DNA of 64,000 bases from Ostrea edulis (Eukaryota): positions 65,410,001-65,474,000 of the forward strand of contig NC_079172.1 in the NCBI RefSeq assembly GCF_947568905.1. The letters are read 5' to 3'. The position numbers and the translations under genes are program-made. Position 1 is the first letter of the stretch. The number at the start of each line of letters is the position of its first letter. The notes under the pieces are model-generated. The model was given only the letters and a program-made list of their open reading frames with translations. It ran no database searches and had not been told where the DNA came from. Shown here in pieces: positions 8,541-56,410 of this stretch.

Positions 8541-9849
8541 CTGGTGTGAAATTTTAAGCAAACAATGAATTGATCTTATAAGCAAATATCACATAGATTT
8601 CAATATACTTAATGCTTATGAGTTTTCACGGTACAAAGTTAATTTAATTCATCAATGTTGTACCCTACTATCTCTTCTATTGATTCAGTCTTTACTTAGG
8701 TTTTTAACATTATACCGTATTAGCTCTAAATCTGAAAGTTTTATTTTGTTGTAAAAATGTGCTATTATGATAGTTTTGTATATAATTTTTTAACCGTAGT
8801 CATTGATGAAATTAAAACAAAGTTTAAGATTTCATCAAAATAAAGATTTCAGTTCTATTGAATATATAGCATATTATACAGAAATCAATTTTTGTAATAG
8901 AAAGACAATAATGTAATTTTGCTTCTTCAGGGCCTCTGGATAGGTTGTTTAATACAAATATTAATAACAAAAGTTTATAAACCTATTTTTTCTGTCATTG
9001 AGATTGTACAATAATGAACTTAGAAACACTAATAAAATCTTCCTGTGACTTCTAGACTTGCAACTGACTGGGTGATCTTGTGTGAAACAAGGTATATGGG
9101 GTTAATCACGATTTCTCAAATGAATTTATTTTATCTCAGATAAAAAAGAAATAGCTCATTGTGATTTGAAATCTCTTACAAATTCTATCATTGATAAAAT
9201 ATTCAAGCTCAGCTCTGATGGGATATTCTCATACAATTCACCATGGGGAGGCCCTTCTGATCTAACTAGTATATCTCCCAGCTCTTTTGTCTATAAAAAT
9301 GGTATCCCATGATTTCATCATAATCTTAACGAAATAGATGGGGGACCAGGTGTTTATCACTCAATGAAGTGATAACATAAAATATATACCAAGGTCAAGG
9401 TCATTAAGACACTTACTCTTGATAGGAACATTGCACATGACTCAGCTGTAATAATGAATGATAAGGCCGAGTTCACACAATTACCAACAAAACTTGGTTA
9501 ACATGCATGGTCAGATCAGCATGATCAATATATCAACAGTTATACATGTATATGCACGATAGGTTAGTCTGTAATCACTAATGCCGGTTATAATAAAAAC
9601 AATTATATCACTGTTTACCAACGTATATTGATATACATGTGACTTGAGTTTGTCTGGGGTTTTACATGCACATGGTCATAGAAGTTCCCTTGATTTAAAC
9701 ATAATTTTTTAATATTTCATATATAATATAACAAAAGGTTCGAACACAAGTTCTTACACCTTACGAAGTTCTCACCTAAAAGTTCCCTTAAGATTTTTAA
9801 TGAAGAGAGATTTGAAGTAGAGAAGCATTGCATTTTGTTAATTACGTAC

Positions 9850-9966
9850 AGACTTATGTTGAGTCCACTCGTTAGCGTCAAATTCAAGTTTGCCTCCGAC
9901 ATCTGTTGTAATCTGGTCCTCACTGATGTAATCCAACATCTCGCTGGGCTCATTACACAACACAAC
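9850..9966 (-). CDS. MCF2L: DBS/MCF2L-like GEF coding exon 6 (VVLCNEPSEMLDYISEDQITTDVGGKLEFDANEWTQHKS)
   Basis: CCTTTGTAG acceptor, TCT|GTACGT donor, 117 nt. L..YI...Q.T.D.GG.L....W end of the SEC14 domain. Confidence 0.9.
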
Positions 9967-11505
9967 CTACAAAGGCAATATAAAGTTAATATCAAACATC
10001 TCACTGGGCTCATTACAAAACACTACCTACAAAGGCAATATAAAGTTAATATCAAACATCTCACTGGGCTCATTACAAAACACAACCTACAATGGCAATA
10101 TAAAGTTAATATCAAACATCTCGCTGGGCTCATTACATAACACTACCTACAAAGGCAATATAAAGTTAATATCAAACATCTCACTGGGCTCATTACATAA
10201 CACAACCTACAAAGGCAATATAAAGTTAATATCAAACATCTCGCTAGGCTCATTACAAAACATTACCTACAAAGGCAATATAAAGTTAATATCAAACATC
10301 TCACTGGGCTCATTACATAACACTTCCTACAAAGGCAATATAAAGTTAATATCAAACATCTCACTGGGCTCATTACATAACACTACCTACAAAGGCAATA
10401 TAAAGTTAATATCAAACATCCCACTGGGCTCATTACATAACATTACCTACAAAGGCAATATAAAGTTAATATCAAACATCTCACTGGGCTCATTACATAA
10501 GACAACCTACAAAGGCAATATAAAGTTAATATCAAACATCTCACTGGGCTCATTACATAACATTACCTACAAAGGCAATATAAAGTTAATATCAAACATC
10601 TCGCTGGGCTCATTACATAACACAACCTACAAAGGCAATATAAAGTTAATATCAAACATCTCACTGGGCTCATTACATAACATTACCTACAAAGGCAATA
10701 TAAAGTTAATATCAAACATCTCGCTGGGCTCATTACATAACACTACCTACAAAGGCAATATAAAGTTAATATCAAACATCTCACTGGGCTCATTACAAAA
10801 CACTACCTACAAAGGCAATATAAATTTAATATCAAACATCTCACTGGGCTCATTACAAAACACTACCTACAAAGGCAATATAAATTTAATATCAAACATC
10901 TCGCTGGGCTCATTACAAAACACTACCTACAAAGGCAATATAAAGTTAATATCAAACATCTCACTGGGCTCATTACATAAGACAACCTACAAAGGCAATA
11001 TAAAGTTAATATCAAACATCTCGCTGGGCTCATTACATAACATTACCTACAAAGGCAATATAAAGTTAATATCAAACATCTCACTGGGCTCATTTCATAA
11101 CACTACCTACAAAGGCAATATAAAGTTAATATCAAACATCTCACTGGGCTCATTACATAACACTACCTACAAAGGCAATATAAAGTTAATATCAAACATC
11201 TCACTGGGCTCATTACATAACACTACCTACAAAGGCAATATAAAGTTAATATCAAACATCTCACTGGGCTCATTACATAACACTACCTACAAAAGCAATA
11301 TAAAGTTAGTATCAAACATCTTGCTGGGCTCATTACAAAACACTACCTACAAAGGCAATATAAAGTTAATATCAAACATCTCGCTGGGCTCATTACATAA
11401 CATTACCTACAAAGGCAATATAAAGTTAATATCAAACATCTCACTGGGCTCATTACAAAACACTACCTACAAAGGCAATATAAAGTTAATATCAAACATC
11501 TCGCT
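9935..11505. repeat. 60-bp tandem array (26 copies) spanning the DBS exon 6 acceptor
   Basis: Unit AACATCTCGCTGGGCTCATTACACAACACAACCTACAAAGGCAATATAAAGTTAATATCA; exact 60-bp register. Confidence 0.97.
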
Positions 11506-12032
11506 AATTATCATTACATGACTGGCATAACATAACACTACCTTACAAAGGCAACATGATTTATTTCAAATATCTCGCTGGGCTCATTATCTAATCTAAT
11601 ATTACCTAGATGGGCAATATAAAGTTATATCAAACATTTTACTAGATTTGTAACTTTAGAGTGATTATTATCTTTATATCATTGAGCTTGTTACACGAAA
11701 TTACTGATAAATGGTAAATTAAAATCAGTTTACCGCACTCATTACATAACAATGCTTGAATTGGTAAAAAAAAAGTTTACTAATTTCCAAGTTAAGAAAG
11801 AAATTATCCATTAATATGATGTATTTGATTACTTTATGTACCAACTTAAAATATACTGAATTGCTCAAATCCTTTCCCCATGAATAAAAGTAGAAAGCAA
11901 ACCCAACATTCTTACAAACCTATATTAACATTGATGTTTTACACATATAAGAGAAGATTAAATATCTTTATATCCTTTCAAAATAATGCAATATAATGAT
12001 ATGTTAAAAAGGCCTTTAGCCCTGCACCTCAC

Positions 12033-12146
12033 CTTGAATTCTAATTCTTCTTTCACAAACTTGGATTTCATATCAGCAAAAGCTCTTTGGAAGAATCCCT
12101 TTGGTTGAAGTAGGAATACAACTTGTATATGGTTTGGGAAAAACTC
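12033..12146 (-). CDS. MCF2L: DBS/MCF2L-like GEF coding exon 5 (EFFPNHIQVVFLLQPKGFFQRAFADMKSKFVKEELEFK)
   Basis: TTCTTGGCAG acceptor, AAG|GTGAGG donor, 114 nt phase 0/0. FP....V..L.P.GFFQR motif. Confidence 0.92.
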
Positions 12147-12149
12147 CTG

Positions 12150-12321
12150 CCAAGAAACAATATAGACTATCAGTATTTAGAACCTACAGAAACAATATAG
12201 ACTGTCAGTATTTATTACACTCTACAGAAACAATATTGACTGTCAGTATTACACTCTACAGAAACAATATTGACTGTCAGTATTTATTACACTCTACAGA
12301 AACAATATTGACTGTCAGTAT

Positions 12322-12355
<34 letters not shown>

Positions 12356-13040
12356 TGTTTTGTTTGACCCGAGAAGCCTTCGGCTTCGGGCAACAGATCG
12401 GTTCTTGGGTCAAACAAAACAGTGTTGTCCGAGGACACCGTCCATAACTGTTTTGTTATACATCTTCGTTTTCTAAAGGTTGTTTTTACGAGATGCACAT
12501 GGTTTGTTGACTTCGAACTTTTAACAAGACAGTGTAATTTAACTGCGTAGTACGTTTATCAATGAATCCACTAATTAAAAGAAAACACACCCAATATCCG
12601 AATTAATAATCAATCATTACATTTTTCGTATTCCTGTTTAGTGTTTCATCTAATAAATTCTGTATTTCATCATCAGTTAAATCACTCAACCTCGCCATTG
12701 CATAAGCAAAGCAGCAGATCGATAATCACGTGACTTGCGTAGCCAATGGACAGAAGGCAGACTATTGCCCGGTCATTAGTTCGTAAACTGTTGACCGGTC
12801 AATAGATATGAGTGTGAGAATTGGTTTAACAGTTAAAATGTTAGTTCTAAATCGTATTAGTTTTATATAGGAAAGAAAATGAAGGTGTATAACAATACAC
12901 TCTACAGAAACAATGTTGACCGTCAGTATTTAGATTCTACAGAAACAATGGTTTTTAGATGTTACATAAACAATAGTATTTAGATTCTACAAAAACTGTC
13001 AGTATTTTTTACACTCTACAGAAACAATACTATCAGTGTT
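12150..13040. repeat. 35-39-bp array abutting the DBS exon 5 acceptor, split by the hairpin element
   Basis: Unit CTACAGAAACAATATTGACTGTCAGTATT(TATTA)CACT at 12150-12320 and degenerate at 12895-13040. Confidence 0.85.
12321..12892. mobile_element. Non-autonomous DNA element with long terminal hairpin (superfamily uncertain)
   Basis: About 50-bp arms at 12325-12374 and 12403-12451 are near-perfect inverted repeats. Termini TTATACA...TGTATAA. Interrupts a 35-39-bp array that resumes at about 12895. Confidence 0.65.
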
Positions 13041-13299: not shown

Positions 13300-13640
13300 A
13301 CTGACCAGTATCAGTGGCTAAGTGGTTAGAGAATTTGCTAAGTGACCGGGAGGTCATGAGTTCAAGCCCCATGCATCAAATTTAAGATGTAAACATCGGT
13401 AGTGACTGCTCCTATGCTAAACATCTGGCATTTAGAAGTGAGAAATGCGGGTCTTTTGGACAAGATCTTCAAAACCGAGGTCCCGTGTTGCGGCAGACAT
13501 TGGCACGTTAAAGAACCCTCACTGCTTCGGCCGTAAGCGCCATGCATAGGTCAAAATTGGGACACTTCACCTACAGCTGGCAACATCTTAATACAAGTGA
13601 AAAATTCTCAAAGGAACATCAAAACAAAAAAAGAAACAAA
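13300..13640 (+). mobile_element. tRNA-derived SINE with Meta-type core
   Basis: A-box-like GTGGCTAAGTGG and B-box-like GAGTTCAAGCCC; core AAACCGAGGTCCCGTGT...TGGCACGTTAAAGAACCCTC; (A)nC tail. Confidence 0.8.
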
Positions 13641-14256: not shown

Positions 14257-14610
14257 CTGTAGGAAAGTGGTCATGTTAATCATGCAGACACAGTTACATA
14301 GTCATCAATCAGAGGGGGGGGGGGGGGGGAGGGGGTGTAGGAAAGTCATGTTAATCAGACACAGTCACATTCATCAAACTGAGGGGTGGTTGTGGAGAAG
14401 TCTCAAATCATAACACCGTAACACAAGCAAAGTACTGCTTAACGCTAACTCCAGCATTGTTTTACCTAGGTCAGCAGGAAGCAATGGAGAAGTACATCTA
14501 AGTGTTAACAAGTTATGTACACTCTTACATATCAGTTAGACTGCTACTTCTGACATTTATCTGTCATCAATGCATTTACGATTGTATAAAAGAGCTACAT
14601 CTTACATGCA

Positions 14611-14760
14611 CCTGTGATAAATGCGTATCATGATTGTATACCTGTGATAAATGCGTATCATGATTGTATACCTGTGATAAATGCGTATCATGATTGTATG
14701 CCTGTGATAAATGCGTATCGTGATTGTATACCTGTGATAAATGCGTATCGTGATTGTATC
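14611..14760. repeat. 30-bp array (5 copies) spanning the DBS exon 2 donor
   Basis: Unit CCTGTGATAAATGCGTATC(A/G)TGATTGTAT(A/G). Confidence 0.95.
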
Positions 14761-14818: not shown

Positions 14819-15105
14819 CTGTAAATAAACAAAACAGTGTCACAAGAAAATGAAAGGAACATATCAGACAAGAACTTCCATATTGTAAATCAAATTTCAG
14901 TTGCTACAGTAATTCACAATTTAAATGGTTGATAGGCAGTCAACAAACCAAATAACATCGAATGGATATACAATTGTTGTTTCCCTTTGTTAAACTTATT
15001 CTGTGAGATGTTAAAACTATTTACGTATAGTCAGGTGGTGAGAACAAATGATTAACATGTTGTTTATATACTACACAGCAAAATATCATCTGATGCAAAT
15101 AAGTT

Positions 15106-16292
15106 CATGAGTTTTCAAGGTTAAAGATCTCATCATGAGTTTTCAAGGTTAAAGATCTCATTGTGAGTTTTCAAGGTTAAAGATCTCATCATGAGTTTTC
15201 AAAGTTAAAGATCTCATCATGAGTTTTCAAGGTTAAAGATCTCATCATGAGTTTTCAAGGTTAAAGATCTCATTGTGAGTTTTCAAGGTTAAAGATCTCA
15301 TCATGAGTTTTGAAGGTTAAAGATCTCATCATGAGTTTGGAAAGTTAAAGATCTCATCATGAGTTTTCAAGGTTAAAGTTCTGATTGTGAGTTTTCAAGG
15401 TTAAATATATCATCATGAGTTTTGAAGGTTAAAGATCTCATCATGAGTTTGGAAAGTTAAAGATCTCATCATGCGTTTTCAAGGTTAAAGTTCTGATTGT
15501 GAGTTTTTAAGGTTAAAGTTCTGATTGTGAGTTTTTAAGGTTAAATATATCATCATGAGTTTTGAAGGTTAAAGATCTCATCATGAGTTTTTAAAGTTAA
15601 AGATATCATTGTGAGTTTTCAAAGTTAAAGATCTCATCATGAGTTTTCAAGGTTACATGTAGATGTCATCATGAGTTTTCAAGATTAAATATCTCATCAT
15701 GAGTTTTCAAGGTTAAAGATCTCATCATGAGTTTTGAAGGTTAAAGATCTCATTGTGAGTTTTTCAAGGTTAAAGATCTCATCATGAGTTTTGAAGGTTA
15801 AAGATCTCATCACAGGGCTCGAAATTAACATATGCCCGTCAGTCTGTGACTGGTTGAAAGTCTGGCGGACTGACTGACATTTGTTTTAGTCAGTCCAATG
15901 GGACTGGTTAATTTTCTAAAGCATCATTTTGGAAAATATATTTATGAAATCTTATACACACATTTGGCATGCTTCGATCTGTAGATATCAAACGAATTTG
16001 ATTCGTAAATATAAATCCCACATAAGTGTTACAATATTGTCTGAAGCATATTGAGTTAAATTTCATTTTAATAACATTAACGAAATCTGCTTAATTATTT
16101 CTGGAAAACTGTTGGACTGGTAAATTTTTCTGCGGACAGGTTGAAATTATACCTCATCAATCCGGCTGGACTGGTGACATGAAAAGTTAGCTTCAAGCCC
16201 AATGCATCATGAGTTTTCAAGGTTAAAGATCTCATCATGAGTTTTCAAGGTTAAAGATCTCATCATGAGTTTTCAAGATTAAAGATCTCATG
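15106..16292. repeat. 28-bp minisatellite (about 28 copies) interrupted by a MITE
   Basis: Unit CATGAGTTTTCAAGGTTAAAGATCTCAT. Confidence 0.95.
15813..16204. mobile_element. CAG-terminal MITE inserted in the 28-bp array
   Basis: Left CAGGGCTCGAAATTAAC, right GTTAGCTTCAAGCCC(AA)TG. Flanking CATCA duplicated (15808-15812, 16205-16209). Confidence 0.65.
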
Positions 16293-53319: not shown

Positions 53320-56300
53320 CCTTGCCGCAGGACATGCGAGACGCCATAATTGTAATCTTGTACAAGAAAAAGGGTGACAGAGGCGACTGTAACAACTACA
53401 GGGGCACCTCCCTTCTGAGCACCGTTGGCAAACTAACGCTCAATAGTGGATATGGTCTTCTCCACCCGCCAACTACAGGAAAATCTTCTCCCTCCACCAA
53501 CTACACGAAACGCGCAGAGAGAGCCGCAGAAAACCCTCTGTACAGTCGTCATTGACCTCACCAAAGCGTTTGACTTGGTCAGTCAGTTGGGAAGGACTCT
53601 TCAGCACCCCCCTGAAAACTGGATGCCCCCCCCCCCCCCCCCCCCCCACACACATCTATGACGATATGAAAGCGACTCTCCAGCACGAGGGTAGTATGTC
53701 GGATCCATTTGACGTCAAACAAGGCTGCATCATGGTGCCCTCCCTCTTTGGCATCTTCTTTCTCTCTGCTGTTGAAGCATGCTTTTGGAACGTCCAGCGA
53801 GGGAGTGCACCAGAACGGATGGACGATTCTTTAGTCTCGCCAGACTGAGAGCAAAGACCAAGGTGCACGAACCCCTCGTCAGGGACATGTTCTGATGACG
53901 CTGCTGTCACTTCACACACTGAACAGTAACTCCAGAGTCTCATGGACAGGTTTTCACAAGTCTGTAAAGACGTTGGGCTCACTATTAGCCAGCAAAAAAC
54001 CAATGTGATGTGCCAAAATATGGAGAGTACCCTGGTCATCATCATCGACAACTACGAACTGGACGTTGTCCACCAGTTTATGTACCTTGGTTCTGCCAAC
54101 AACGTCCATCTGTTCCTCGACGTTAAGATCAGTCAGCGCATCGGGAAGGCTGCAACAATGCTAGGTCGACTCACGTCTCGTGTGACTGTGTGGGAAAGTC
54201 CCAAACTGACAGCAGCTATCACGATGTCAGTGTACCAGACCTGCATCATCAGTACACCACTGTACGGCAGCATCAGTACACTATTGTATGGCAGCATCAG
54301 TACACTATTATATGGCATCATCAGTACACTATTGTATGGCAGTCAGTACATCACTGTACGGCATCATAAGTACGCCACTGTACGGCATCATCAGTACACT
54401 ATTGTATGGCATCATCACTACACTATTGTATGACATCATCAGTACACTATTGTATGACAGCATCAGTACACTATTGTATGACAGCATCAGTACACTATTG
54501 TATGACAGCATCAGTACACTATTGTATGGTAGCATCAGTACACTATTGTATGACAGCATCAGTACACTATTGTACGGCAACATCAGTACACTATTGTACG
54601 GCATCATCAGTACACTATTGTATGACATCATCAGTACACTATTGTATGACAGCATCAGTACACTATTGTATGACAGCATCAGTACACTATTGTATGACAG
54701 CATCAGTACACTATTGTATGGTAGCATCAGTACACTATTGTATGACAGCATCAGTACACTATTGTACGGCAACATCAGTACACTATTGTACGGCATCATC
54801 AGTACACTATTGTATGACATCATCAGTACACTATTGTATGACATCATCAGTACACTATTGTATGGCAGCATCAGTACACTACTGTACGACATCATCAGTA
54901 CACTATTGTATGACAGCATCAGTACACTATTGTATGACAGCATCAGTACACTATTGTACGACATCATCAGTACACTATTGTATGACATCATCAGTACACT
55001 ATTGTATGACAGCATCAGTACACTATTGTATGACATCATCAGTACACTATTGTATGACATCATCAGTACACTATTGTATGACATCATCAGTACACTACTG
55101 TATGGCAGCATCAGTACACTACTGTACGACATCATCAGTACACTATTGTATGACATCATCAGTACACTATTGTATGGCAGCATCAGTACACTACTGTACG
55201 ACATCATCAGTACACTATTGTATGACATCATCAGTACACTATTGTATGACAGCATCAGTACACTATTGTACGACAGCATCAGTACACTATTGTATGGTAG
55301 CATCAGTACACTATTGTACAGCAGCATCAGTACACTATTGTATGACATCATCAGTACACTATTGTATGACATCATCAGTACACTATTGTATGACATCATC
55401 AGTACACTACTGTACGGTAGCATCAGTACACCACTGTACGGCATCATCAGTACACTATTGTATGGCATCATCAGTACACTATTGTATGACATCATCAGTA
55501 CACTATTGTACGGCAGCATCAGTACACCACTGTACGACATCATCAGTACACTATTGTATGACATCATCAGTACACTACTGTACGGTAGCATCAGTACACC
55601 ACTGTACGGCATCATCAGTACACTATTGTATGGCATCATCAGTACACTATTGTATGGCAGCATCAGTACACCACTGTACGACATCATCAGTACACTATTG
55701 TATGACATCATCAGTACACTATTGTACGGCAGCATCAGTACACTATTGTATGACATCATCAGTTCACTATTGTATAGCAGCATCAGTACACCACTGTACG
55801 ACATCATCAGTACACTATTGTATGACATCATCAGTACACTACTGTACGGTAGCATCAGTACACCACTGTACGGCATCATCAGTACACTATTGTATGACAT
55901 CATCAGTACACTATTGTATGGCATCATCAGTACACTATTGTATGACATCATCAGTACACTATTGTATGACATCACCAGTACACTATTGTATGACATCACC
56001 AGTACACTATTGTATGACATCATCAGTACACCACTGTACGACAGCATCAATACACCACTGTACGACAGCATCAGTACACTATTGTATGACATCATCAGTA
56101 CACTATTGTATGGCATCATCAGTACACTATTGTATGACATCATCAGTACACTATTGTATGACATCACCAGTACACTATTGTATGACATCACCAGTACACT
56201 ATTGTATGACATCATCAGTACACTATTGTATGACATCACCAGTACACTATTGTATGACATCACCAGCACACTATTGTATGGCATCATCAGTACACTATTG

Positions 56301-56410
56301 TATGACATCATCAGTACACCACTGTACGCTGAGAATCCTGGACAACATATAGTGACACTTCTCAGAATGATTTTTATTGGGTTATGTTTACATTTCCAAT
56401 GTCTTACCGT
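53320..56410 (+). mobile_element. RTE (BovB-like) LINE relic with an internal 24-bp satellite expansion
   Basis: PQDMRDAIIVILYKKKGDRGDCNNYRGTSLLS, DLTKAFD, VKQGC, DDAA, LTISQQKTNVM, FMYLGS, RIGKAA...LYG motifs across frameshifts and stops. Confidence 0.9.
54244..56328. repeat. 24-bp satellite, about 85 copies, derived from RTE coding sequence
   Basis: Unit ATCAGTACACTATTGTATGACATC (ISTLLYD/GI/S). Confidence 0.97.

What the first reader, a model, noticed from the sequence alone, without database searches (positions are those of the whole stretch)
9935..11505. 25 decoy 3' splice sites upstream of DBS exon 6, most reading AG|GTA
Seen: on the minus strand each 60-bp unit reads TGATATTAACTTTATATTGCCTTTGTAG followed by the first 32 nt of exon 6. 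The real AG (9967) is the last of 26 identical acceptors. Use of any upstream AG adds GTNGTG...TTG TAG, an in-frame stop. Of the 25 decoys, 19 are followed by GTAGTG or GTAATG, 5 by GTTGT(G/C) like the true exon, and 1 by GAAGTG. Inference: the drift toward AG|GTA creates acceptor-donor juxtapositions resembling recursive-splicing ratchet points, which could let the intron be removed stepwise. The +5 position is T, so these donors are weak; simple homogenisation of one variant is an alternative explanation.
Basis: partly seen in the sequence, partly recalled or inferred. Interest (0 to 1): 0.8.

Follow-up and report, generated by a model that had tools for sequence, protein, structure and literature searches.

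The report
Splice-junction minisatellite before DBS exon 6
In the flat oyster's DBS gene the border between intron 5 and exon 6 has been copied head-to-tail 26 times, leaving 25 spare splice acceptors; this is a known kind of repeat ("mirage"), and the idea that the spares help remove the intron stepwise has no support so far.

Summary
A 60-bp array of 26 copies lies at 9931-11502 on the minus strand. Each unit is the last 28 nt of intron 5 plus the first 32 nt of exon 6 of the Ostrea edulis DBS-like RhoGEF gene. After the 25 upstream AGs come 13 GTAGTG, 6 GTAATG, 5 GTTGT(G/C) and 1 GAAGTG. Every decoy would give an in-frame stop within 20 codons.

The array is absent from two Saccostrea species. 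Exon 6 starts with GTT in Saccostrea, Magallana and the true Ostrea exon, so GTA is derived. That T>A is already present in the decayed units at the array's old edge. It is about as common as two other variants, and the variants travel in 120-bp blocks. This fits a founder change spread by array growth.

After joining to exon 5, GTAATG would score like a mid-range real donor of this gene and GTAGTG like a marginal one. But the intron is only 2.1 kb, the sites are not conserved, and two other acceptor arrays in the window lack AG|GT.

No RNA run was available, so splicing itself is untested. The kind is known from amphioxus "mirages" and human F7. This scan has already reported it on other DNA of the same genome.

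The parts
9931..11502 (-). 60-bp minisatellite, 26 copies. Each unit is 28 nt of the intron 5 3' end (a branch-point-like TATTAAC about 20 nt before the AG, a pyrimidine tract, then TAG) plus the first 32 nt of exon 6.
   Evidence: TRF; unit table and variant columns
9967..9968 (-). Authentic acceptor AG of intron 5, the last of the 26
   Evidence: All four NCBI isoforms join EELEFK to VVLCNEPSEM; exact exon map of XP_048744725 on the locus; the orthologous junction in a M. gigas mRNA contig
9850..9966 (-). Exon 6 (117 nt, phase 0 at both ends), the end of the CRAL_TRIO_2 domain
12033..12146 (-). Exon 5 (114 nt), donor AAG|gtgaggtg
9967..12032 (-). Intron 5, 2,066 nt, of which about 1.5 kb is the array
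11503..11680 (-). Decayed older units at the 5' edge of the array. They already read AG|GTAATA and AG|GTAGTG.
12153..12322 (-). A second acceptor array in the same gene (38 bp x 4.7) in front of exon 5. Most of its decoys read tgtag|AGTGTA and none reads AG|GTA.
14610..14759 (-). Donor array (30 bp x 5) behind exon 2 of the same gene

Best explanation
This is a lineage-specific splice-junction minisatellite (a "mirage") in the Ostrea edulis DBS-like RhoGEF gene. A 60-bp piece spanning the intron 5 / exon 6 border was duplicated in place and amplified by slippage or unequal exchange to 26 copies. The AG|GTA reading comes from one early T>A change at the third base of the copied Val codon. A G>A change was added later on that background. 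Both were carried to their present frequency by array growth and block duplication, not by selection for a donor. The mRNA is made from the last AG. The inferred reason is that only this AG is followed by the rest of exon 6 and its donor 117 nt away (exon definition). Occasional use of a decoy would give a stop codon and probably nonsense-mediated decay. Shown here: the anatomy, lineage specificity, direction of change, block structure and annotated junction. Inferred: the way the real site is chosen and the fate of mis-spliced RNA.
For: The window is O. edulis chromosome OX387712.1 and the gene is DBS-like. There is no array in intron 5 of Saccostrea cucullata (735 nt) or S. echinata (1,405 nt). 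The unit's intron part shares TTATATTG with the S. cucullata acceptor region, so it arose in place. Exon 6 starts with GTT in both Saccostrea, in M. gigas mRNA and in the true O. edulis exon, so GTA is derived. Otherwise the array consensus equals the S. cucullata exon start. The decayed edge units already carry GTA. The A at +3 is in 20 of 26 units, while two other majority alleles that differ from the true exon are in 17 of 26 each. Four of the 6 GTT units sit directly after a GTAATG unit (permutation p 0.015), and units two apart are more alike than neighbours, which points to 120-bp block duplication. All four annotated isoforms use the last AG. Contigs of three other samples stop at both array edges. 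The kind is described in amphioxus and human F7, where normal splicing is kept (PMC3087553, PMC3902484, PMC1557585).
Against: No RNA reads were available, so silence of the decoys is not shown. The two commonest changes next to the AG both raise donor likeness. I estimate the nominal chance of that at about 0.005, before allowing for AT-biased mutation and for the many arrays this scan screened. AAG|GTAATGTT is almost the same as a real donor of this gene in Saccostrea (AAG|GTAATGTC, exon 1), and CAG|GTAATA is a real donor in O. edulis (exon 24). Old duplicated-acceptor experiments cited in PMC1557585 gave conflicting results on which copy is used.
Confidence: 0.75

Rival explanations
1. Recursive rescue or ladder: the decoy AGs are used, the join to exon 5 recreates a donor (AAG|GTAATG or AAG|GTAGTG), and re-splicing to a later AG finally gives the correct mRNA. 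Selection favoured GTA because it makes mis-splicing self-correcting.
For: 24 of 25 decoys read AG|GT. GTA is derived. The regenerated GTAATG site scores 6.2 bits, above 9 of 25 real donors of the gene, and GTAGTG scores 4.0, above 3 of 25, while the true junction scores 0.6. TT at -5 and -6, as at fly ratchet points (10.1101/006163). Recursive lariats have been reported in short human introns too (PMC10156609).
Against: The intron is 2.1 kb and the steps would be 60 nt. Fly recursive introns are 11 kb or more and the removed segments 2.6 kb or more (10.1101/006163). The array is not conserved. No unit has G at +5, and 13 of 19 GTA units carry the weak GTAGTG. Acceptor arrays before exon 5 and before the myosin light-chain exon have no usable AG|GT (four of five and all five decoys read AG|A; one exon 5 decoy reads AG|GTTCTA, -2.0 bits) yet sit in conserved genes. 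The GTA frequency is matched by neutral-looking variants. No junction evidence exists.
Confidence: 0.07
2. Regulatory decoys: the 25 complete acceptor modules bind U2AF and U2 unproductively or are used at a measurable rate. This would slow removal of intron 5 (intron detention) or send part of the transcripts to decay, so array length would tune DBS output.
For: Each unit keeps a branch-point-like motif, a pyrimidine tract and an AG. All 26 AGs are intact, and only 5 of 728 cells in the intron-derived part vary, against 37 of 832 in the exon-derived part. Decoy exons are known to promote intron retention in human cells (PMC6097662, PMC7373989).
Against: The low variation of the intron part rests on four shared old variants and is not significant by columns. 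Such arrays are very common in this genome, which points to a mutational by-product (earlier notes). Reports from amphioxus describe normal splicing (PMC3087553, PMC3902484). No RNA evidence was obtained here.
Confidence: 0.12
3. Assembly artefact: the array or its length is a misassembly.
For: Short-read contigs cover the interior only in patches.
Against: Contigs from three other samples run from unique flank into the first and the last unit and stop there, as expected for a real long repeat. The units carry an ordered pattern of variants. The same sequence stands in the chromosome-level record.
Confidence: 0.02

Closest known systems
Amphioxus "mirages" (Adh3, globin BflGb6/BflGb9, troponin C, PGBD5)
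   Same: Minisatellite-like tandem duplications whose unit spans an exon-intron border, at 5' or 3' borders. Many units keep the AG or GT signal. The authentic site next to the exon is used. Units evolve in concert, with the array edges left out of homogenisation (PMC3087553, PMC3902484).
   Different: This one is in a mollusc. With 26 copies it is far longer than the 3-6 units of BflGb6. Every decoy keeps a full acceptor module. Splicing here is known only from gene models, not from RT-PCR.
Human F7 intron 7 37-bp VNTR
   Same: The first repeat spans the splice junction, so several identical pseudo-sites follow the real one. The pseudo-sites are functional in principle but silent, and only the exon-adjacent site is used (PMC1557585).
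   Different: F7 multiplies a donor (5-9 copies). This array multiplies an acceptor (26 copies), and the real site is the last one transcribed, not the first.
Drosophila zero-nucleotide ratchet points (recursive splicing)
   Same: AG|GT juxtaposition with a pyrimidine tract and TT at -5/-6.
   Different: Ratchet points lie in introns of 11-133 kb, number one to six per intron, remove segments of 2.6 kb or more, carry consensus-like donors and are conserved between species (10.1101/006163). None of this holds here.
Decoy exons that promote intron retention (SF3B1, OGT)
   Same: Intronic splice sites that can engage the splicing machinery without giving a product (PMC6097662, PMC7373989).
   Different: Those are single conserved cryptic exons with both splice sites, and their effect has been shown. 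Here there are repeated acceptor modules with no tested effect.

Membership tests
Mirage / splice-junction minisatellite | Head-to-tail repeat of minisatellite unit size | tested here: met
   60 bp x 26.2, 95% matches
Mirage / splice-junction minisatellite | The unit spans a real exon-intron border and includes the splice signal | tested here: met
   28 nt of intron plus 32 nt of exon 6. The exon map is exact, and the exon part matches the Saccostrea exon at 31 of 32 bases.
Mirage / splice-junction minisatellite | The authentic site is the copy adjoining the rest of the exon | tested here: met
   The last AG at 9967 is the one used in four gene models and at the orthologous M. gigas mRNA junction
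Mirage / splice-junction minisatellite | Normal splicing is kept despite the decoys | not testable with these tools
   No RNA run was found. Only DNA-like contigs could be laid. No truncated open reading frames were found in the protein collection.
Mirage / splice-junction minisatellite | Length instability or polymorphism | not testable with these tools
   Short-read contigs break at the array edges
Recursive splice site (ratchet point) | Juxtaposed acceptor and donor, AG|GT | tested here: met
   24 of 25 decoys
Recursive splice site (ratchet point) | The regenerated donor is of real-donor strength | tested here: inconclusive
   GTAATG (6 units) scores 6.2 bits, which is mid-range. GTAGTG (13 units) scores 4.0 bits, above only 3 of 25 real donors. 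Position +5 is T in all units, against G in 64 of 75 real donors.
Recursive splice site (ratchet point) | Long host intron | tested here: not met
   2,066 nt, against 11,341 nt or more in flies (10.1101/006163)
Recursive splice site (ratchet point) | Conservation of the site between species | tested here: not met
   Absent from intron 5 of two Saccostrea species
Recursive splice site (ratchet point) | Exon-to-site junction reads and site-anchored lariats | not testable with these tools
   No RNA run was served

The most novel reading that the evidence does not exclude
Decoy acceptors that begin with GTA(A) are self-correcting. If exon 5 is joined to one of them, the join recreates a working donor. 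AAG|GTAATGTT is nearly identical to a real donor of this gene in Saccostrea. The transcript would then be spliced again to a later AG. Selection for such re-splicing would explain how oysters tolerate long acceptor arrays. In the three O. edulis acceptor arrays looked at here, most decoys carry a more donor-like motif within 0-15 nt of the AG than the true exon does.
Probability: 0.07. Interest if true: 0.7.

Novelty: new member of a known kind. Interest (0 to 1): 0.3.

Why it matters
The array is a clean natural experiment in acceptor choice. It offers 26 near-identical branch-point, pyrimidine-tract and AG modules in one 2-kb intron of a conserved gene, and only the last one appears in the gene models. 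If the decoys are truly silent, position next to the exon body outweighs both site strength and order of transcription. If they are used and re-spliced, recursion would work at 60-nt steps in a short intron, which would be new. The array also preserves the ancestral synonymous state of the exon start, so it acts as a small dated fossil of the exon. As one more case of a repeat class that is very common in this oyster genome, it is ordinary.

Tried and rejected
- **RNA evidence.** The run search returned four holders, none on record as RNA. Laying them gave only genomic-looking contigs that break at the array.
- **Truncated products.** A protein search for truncated products of decoy use found none. 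There are no O. edulis transcript contigs for this gene in that collection.
- **Magallana genomic locus.** It is not on record for the isoforms tried, so only its mRNA contig was used.
- **A second O. edulis haplotype.** The fetched locus is the same record as the window.
- **RNA structure hiding the decoys.** Four units fold no better than shuffles, z = -0.09.
- **Free U1 duplex energies.** These were uninformative because the pairing slips out of register. I replaced them with a matrix from 75 real donors.
- **My own idea about the internal CCA|GTGAGA.** I thought the true exon had escaped this donor-like motif (AGT>AGC) because the motif is harmful. I rejected this because both Saccostrea real exons carry a GTGAGA there.
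- **Selection on the intron-derived half of the unit.** The difference in variant cells comes from four shared old variants and is not significant by columns.
- **Pfam on single exons.** It gave only sub-threshold CRAL_TRIO_2 hits. Identity was settled with a full-length relative and the NCBI names.

Full report
**What is there**

On the minus strand, 9931-11502 is a 60-bp tandem array of 26.2 copies with 95% matches and no indels. TTGTAG recurs 26 times at exact 60-nt steps, with the G of each AG at 9967+60k. The unit has two halves.
- The first half is 28 nt of intron. It holds TATTAAC, which fits the metazoan branch-point pattern YNYURAY (my own knowledge) and lies about 20 nt before the AG, then a pyrimidine-rich stretch, then TAG.
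- The second half is the first 32 nt of the exon.

After the 25 upstream AGs stand 13 GTAGTG, 6 GTAATG, 3 GTTGTG, 2 GTTGTC and 1 GAAGTG. Twenty-two of the 26 acceptor halves are identical, and four differ by one or two bases. Exon 5 ends in phase 0 and a unit is 20 codons. Each decoy therefore adds an in-frame stop, at the unit's own TAG in 24 cases and after 3 codons in one.

**Which gene and genome**

The window region 9700-12300 is identical to Ostrea edulis chromosome record OX387712.1 of assembly GCA_947568905.1. The gene is annotated as guanine nucleotide exchange factor DBS-like, with four isoforms. I mapped the longest isoform exactly onto the locus.
- The gene has 26 coding exons.
- Exon 5 is 12146..12033, intron 5 is 12032..9967 (2,066 nt), and exon 6 is 9966..9850.
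- All four protein models join exon 5 to the last AG, and none contains decoy-derived peptide.
- A Magallana gigas mRNA contig has the same two junctions around exon 6.

**Is it real DNA?**

Contigs of three other samples of the same organism run from unique flank into the first unit (to 9988 or 9994) and from the last unit or the decayed edge outward (from 11476 or 11563). They stop there, as short-read assemblies do at a long repeat. A fourth sample was too thinly covered to show this.

**Origin and age**

- Intron 5 of Saccostrea cucullata (735 nt) and of S. echinata (1,405 nt) has no such array. The array therefore arose on the Ostrea side.
- The intron half of the unit shares TTATATTG with the S. 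cucullata acceptor region, so the unit was copied in place.
- Exon 6 begins with GTT in both Saccostrea, in Magallana and in the true O. edulis exon. GTA in the decoys is therefore derived.
- At the other two common variable sites the array consensus (TTA, AGT) equals Saccostrea. The true O. edulis exon has since moved to TTG and AGC, both synonymous. The decoys thus preserve an older state of the exon.

**Does GTA need a special explanation?**

- The A at +3 is in 20 of 26 units. Two other majority alleles that differ from the true exon are in 17 of 26 each.
- The decayed units beyond the 5' edge (11503-11680) already read AG|GTAATA and AG|GTAGTG, so the change is old.
- Four of the six GTT units come directly after a GTAATG unit (permutation p = 0.015). 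Units two apart differ less (2.33 differences) than neighbours (2.76). Variants have therefore spread as 120-bp blocks.
- One caution remains. Of the four common variants, the two next to the AG both raise donor likeness. I estimate the nominal chance of that at about 0.005. It is weakened by AT-biased mutation in a 64% A+T window and by the large number of such arrays screened in this genome.

**How donor-like are the sites?**

I built a position weight matrix from the 75 real donors of this gene in O. edulis and the two Saccostrea species. The scores after joining to exon 5 are:

| Site | Score (bits) | Real O. edulis donors scoring lower |
|---|---|---|
| AAG\|GTTGTG (the true junction) | 0.6 | 0 of 25 |
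| AAG\|GTAGTG | 4.0 | 3 of 25 |
| AAG\|GTAATG | 6.2 | 9 of 25 |

- Real donors without G at +5 do exist here: 11 of the 75, all preceded by AAG or CAG.
- Examples are AAG|GTAATGTC (exon 1 of both Saccostrea) and CAG|GTAATA (O. edulis exon 24).
- The six GTAATG units could therefore plausibly act as donors once joined to exon 5. The thirteen GTAGTG units are marginal.

**Why I do not favour recursion**

- Fly recursive introns measure 11,341-132,736 nt. The removed segments are 2,596 nt or more, there are one to six sites per intron, and the sites are conserved (10.1101/006163). Here the intron is 2,066 nt, the steps would be 60 nt, and the sites are lineage-specific.
- Two other acceptor arrays in this window cannot be rescued this way.
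  - Four of the five copies before DBS exon 5 read tgtag|AGTGTA, and the fifth reads tgtag|GTTCTA, which scores -2.0 bits as a donor.
  - The five before the myosin light-chain exon read AG|ATATGAA.
  - Both sit in conserved genes.
- The array RNA has no unusual fold that could hide the sites (z = -0.09).
- Recursion in short human introns has been reported at low level (PMC10156609), so it cannot be excluded.

**What could not be tested**

- No RNA run holding this locus was served, and the four holders gave only genomic-looking contigs.
- A protein search found no truncated products, and there are no O. edulis transcript contigs for this gene in the collection.
- Whether the decoys are silent, leaky or re-spliced is therefore open.

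**Most likely working**

The repeat is a by-product of a very repeat-prone genome. TRF gives 44 rows at score 100 or more in this 64-kb window. I infer that the last AG wins because only it is followed by the remainder of exon 6 and its donor 117 nt downstream. This is the exon-definition view and matches what was found for the exon-adjacent donor in F7 (PMC1557585). Decoy use would be removed by nonsense-mediated decay (inference).

**Comparison with what is known**

This is the "mirage" class of amphioxus: Adh3, globins, troponin C and PGBD5 (PMC3087553, PMC3902484). It is also the acceptor-side counterpart of the human F7 intron 7 VNTR (PMC1557585). I found no paper describing it in oysters. 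This scan has already reported the same kind on other DNA of this genome: TPCN1, MBTPS1 and three housekeeping genes. It has also raised the recursive-splicing idea for several arrays.

**Verdict**

This is a real and precisely described array, a new member of a known kind. The recursive reading is unsupported but not excluded.

Noticed in passing
window 12153-12322 (-) and L001:11346-11515: The acceptor of DBS exon 5 also carries a tandem array in O. edulis (38 bp x 4.7). S. cucullata has a different array (57 bp x 3.0) at the same border. Either the border is hit repeatedly or an old array has turned over.
   Followed up: partly
window 14610-14759 (-); L003:9248-10314; L001:9525-10147: The exon 2 donor border carries arrays of different unit length in O. 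edulis (30 bp x 5) and S. echinata (64 bp x 16.7, unit ending CACAG|GTAA). S. cucullata has a 38-bp x 16.4 array just upstream of exon 2.
   Followed up: no
window 9931-11502 (-), unit positions 29-60: Six of the 10 variable columns in the exon-derived half are third codon positions (hypergeometric p = 0.027), including three of the four common variants. This would fit variants entering the array from synonymous polymorphism of the real exon by unequal exchange. It may also be chance.
   Followed up: partly
window 43372-43591 (+), 12153-12322 (-), 9931-11502 (-): In all three O. edulis acceptor arrays, most decoys have a more donor-like GT motif within 0-15 nt after the AG than the true exon has: 2.8-4.9 against 0.9 bits, 1.6-2.9 against -4.5, and 2.7-7.1 against -0.4. 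The S. cucullata exon 5 array shows nothing of the kind. The scores are low and n = 3.
   Followed up: partly
window 12322-12900 and 13400-13530: Contig depth in four public runs is hundreds of times the single-copy level, with many alternative joints. These are high-copy interspersed repeats inside DBS introns 3 and 4.
   Followed up: no
L004:16808 (a decoy inside the array in the window): A simple exact spliced aligner that required 6 matching residues after the acceptor stopped at a decoy. It needed 14 residues to reach the true site. Annotation pipelines may misplace this junction in the same way.
   Followed up: yes
window 47674-49673, 54244-56326, 15105-15812, 35378-36391: The window is dense in long minisatellites (25 bp x 80, 24 bp x 87, 28 bp x 25, 37 bp x 27). 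Their relation to genes was not examined.
   Followed up: no
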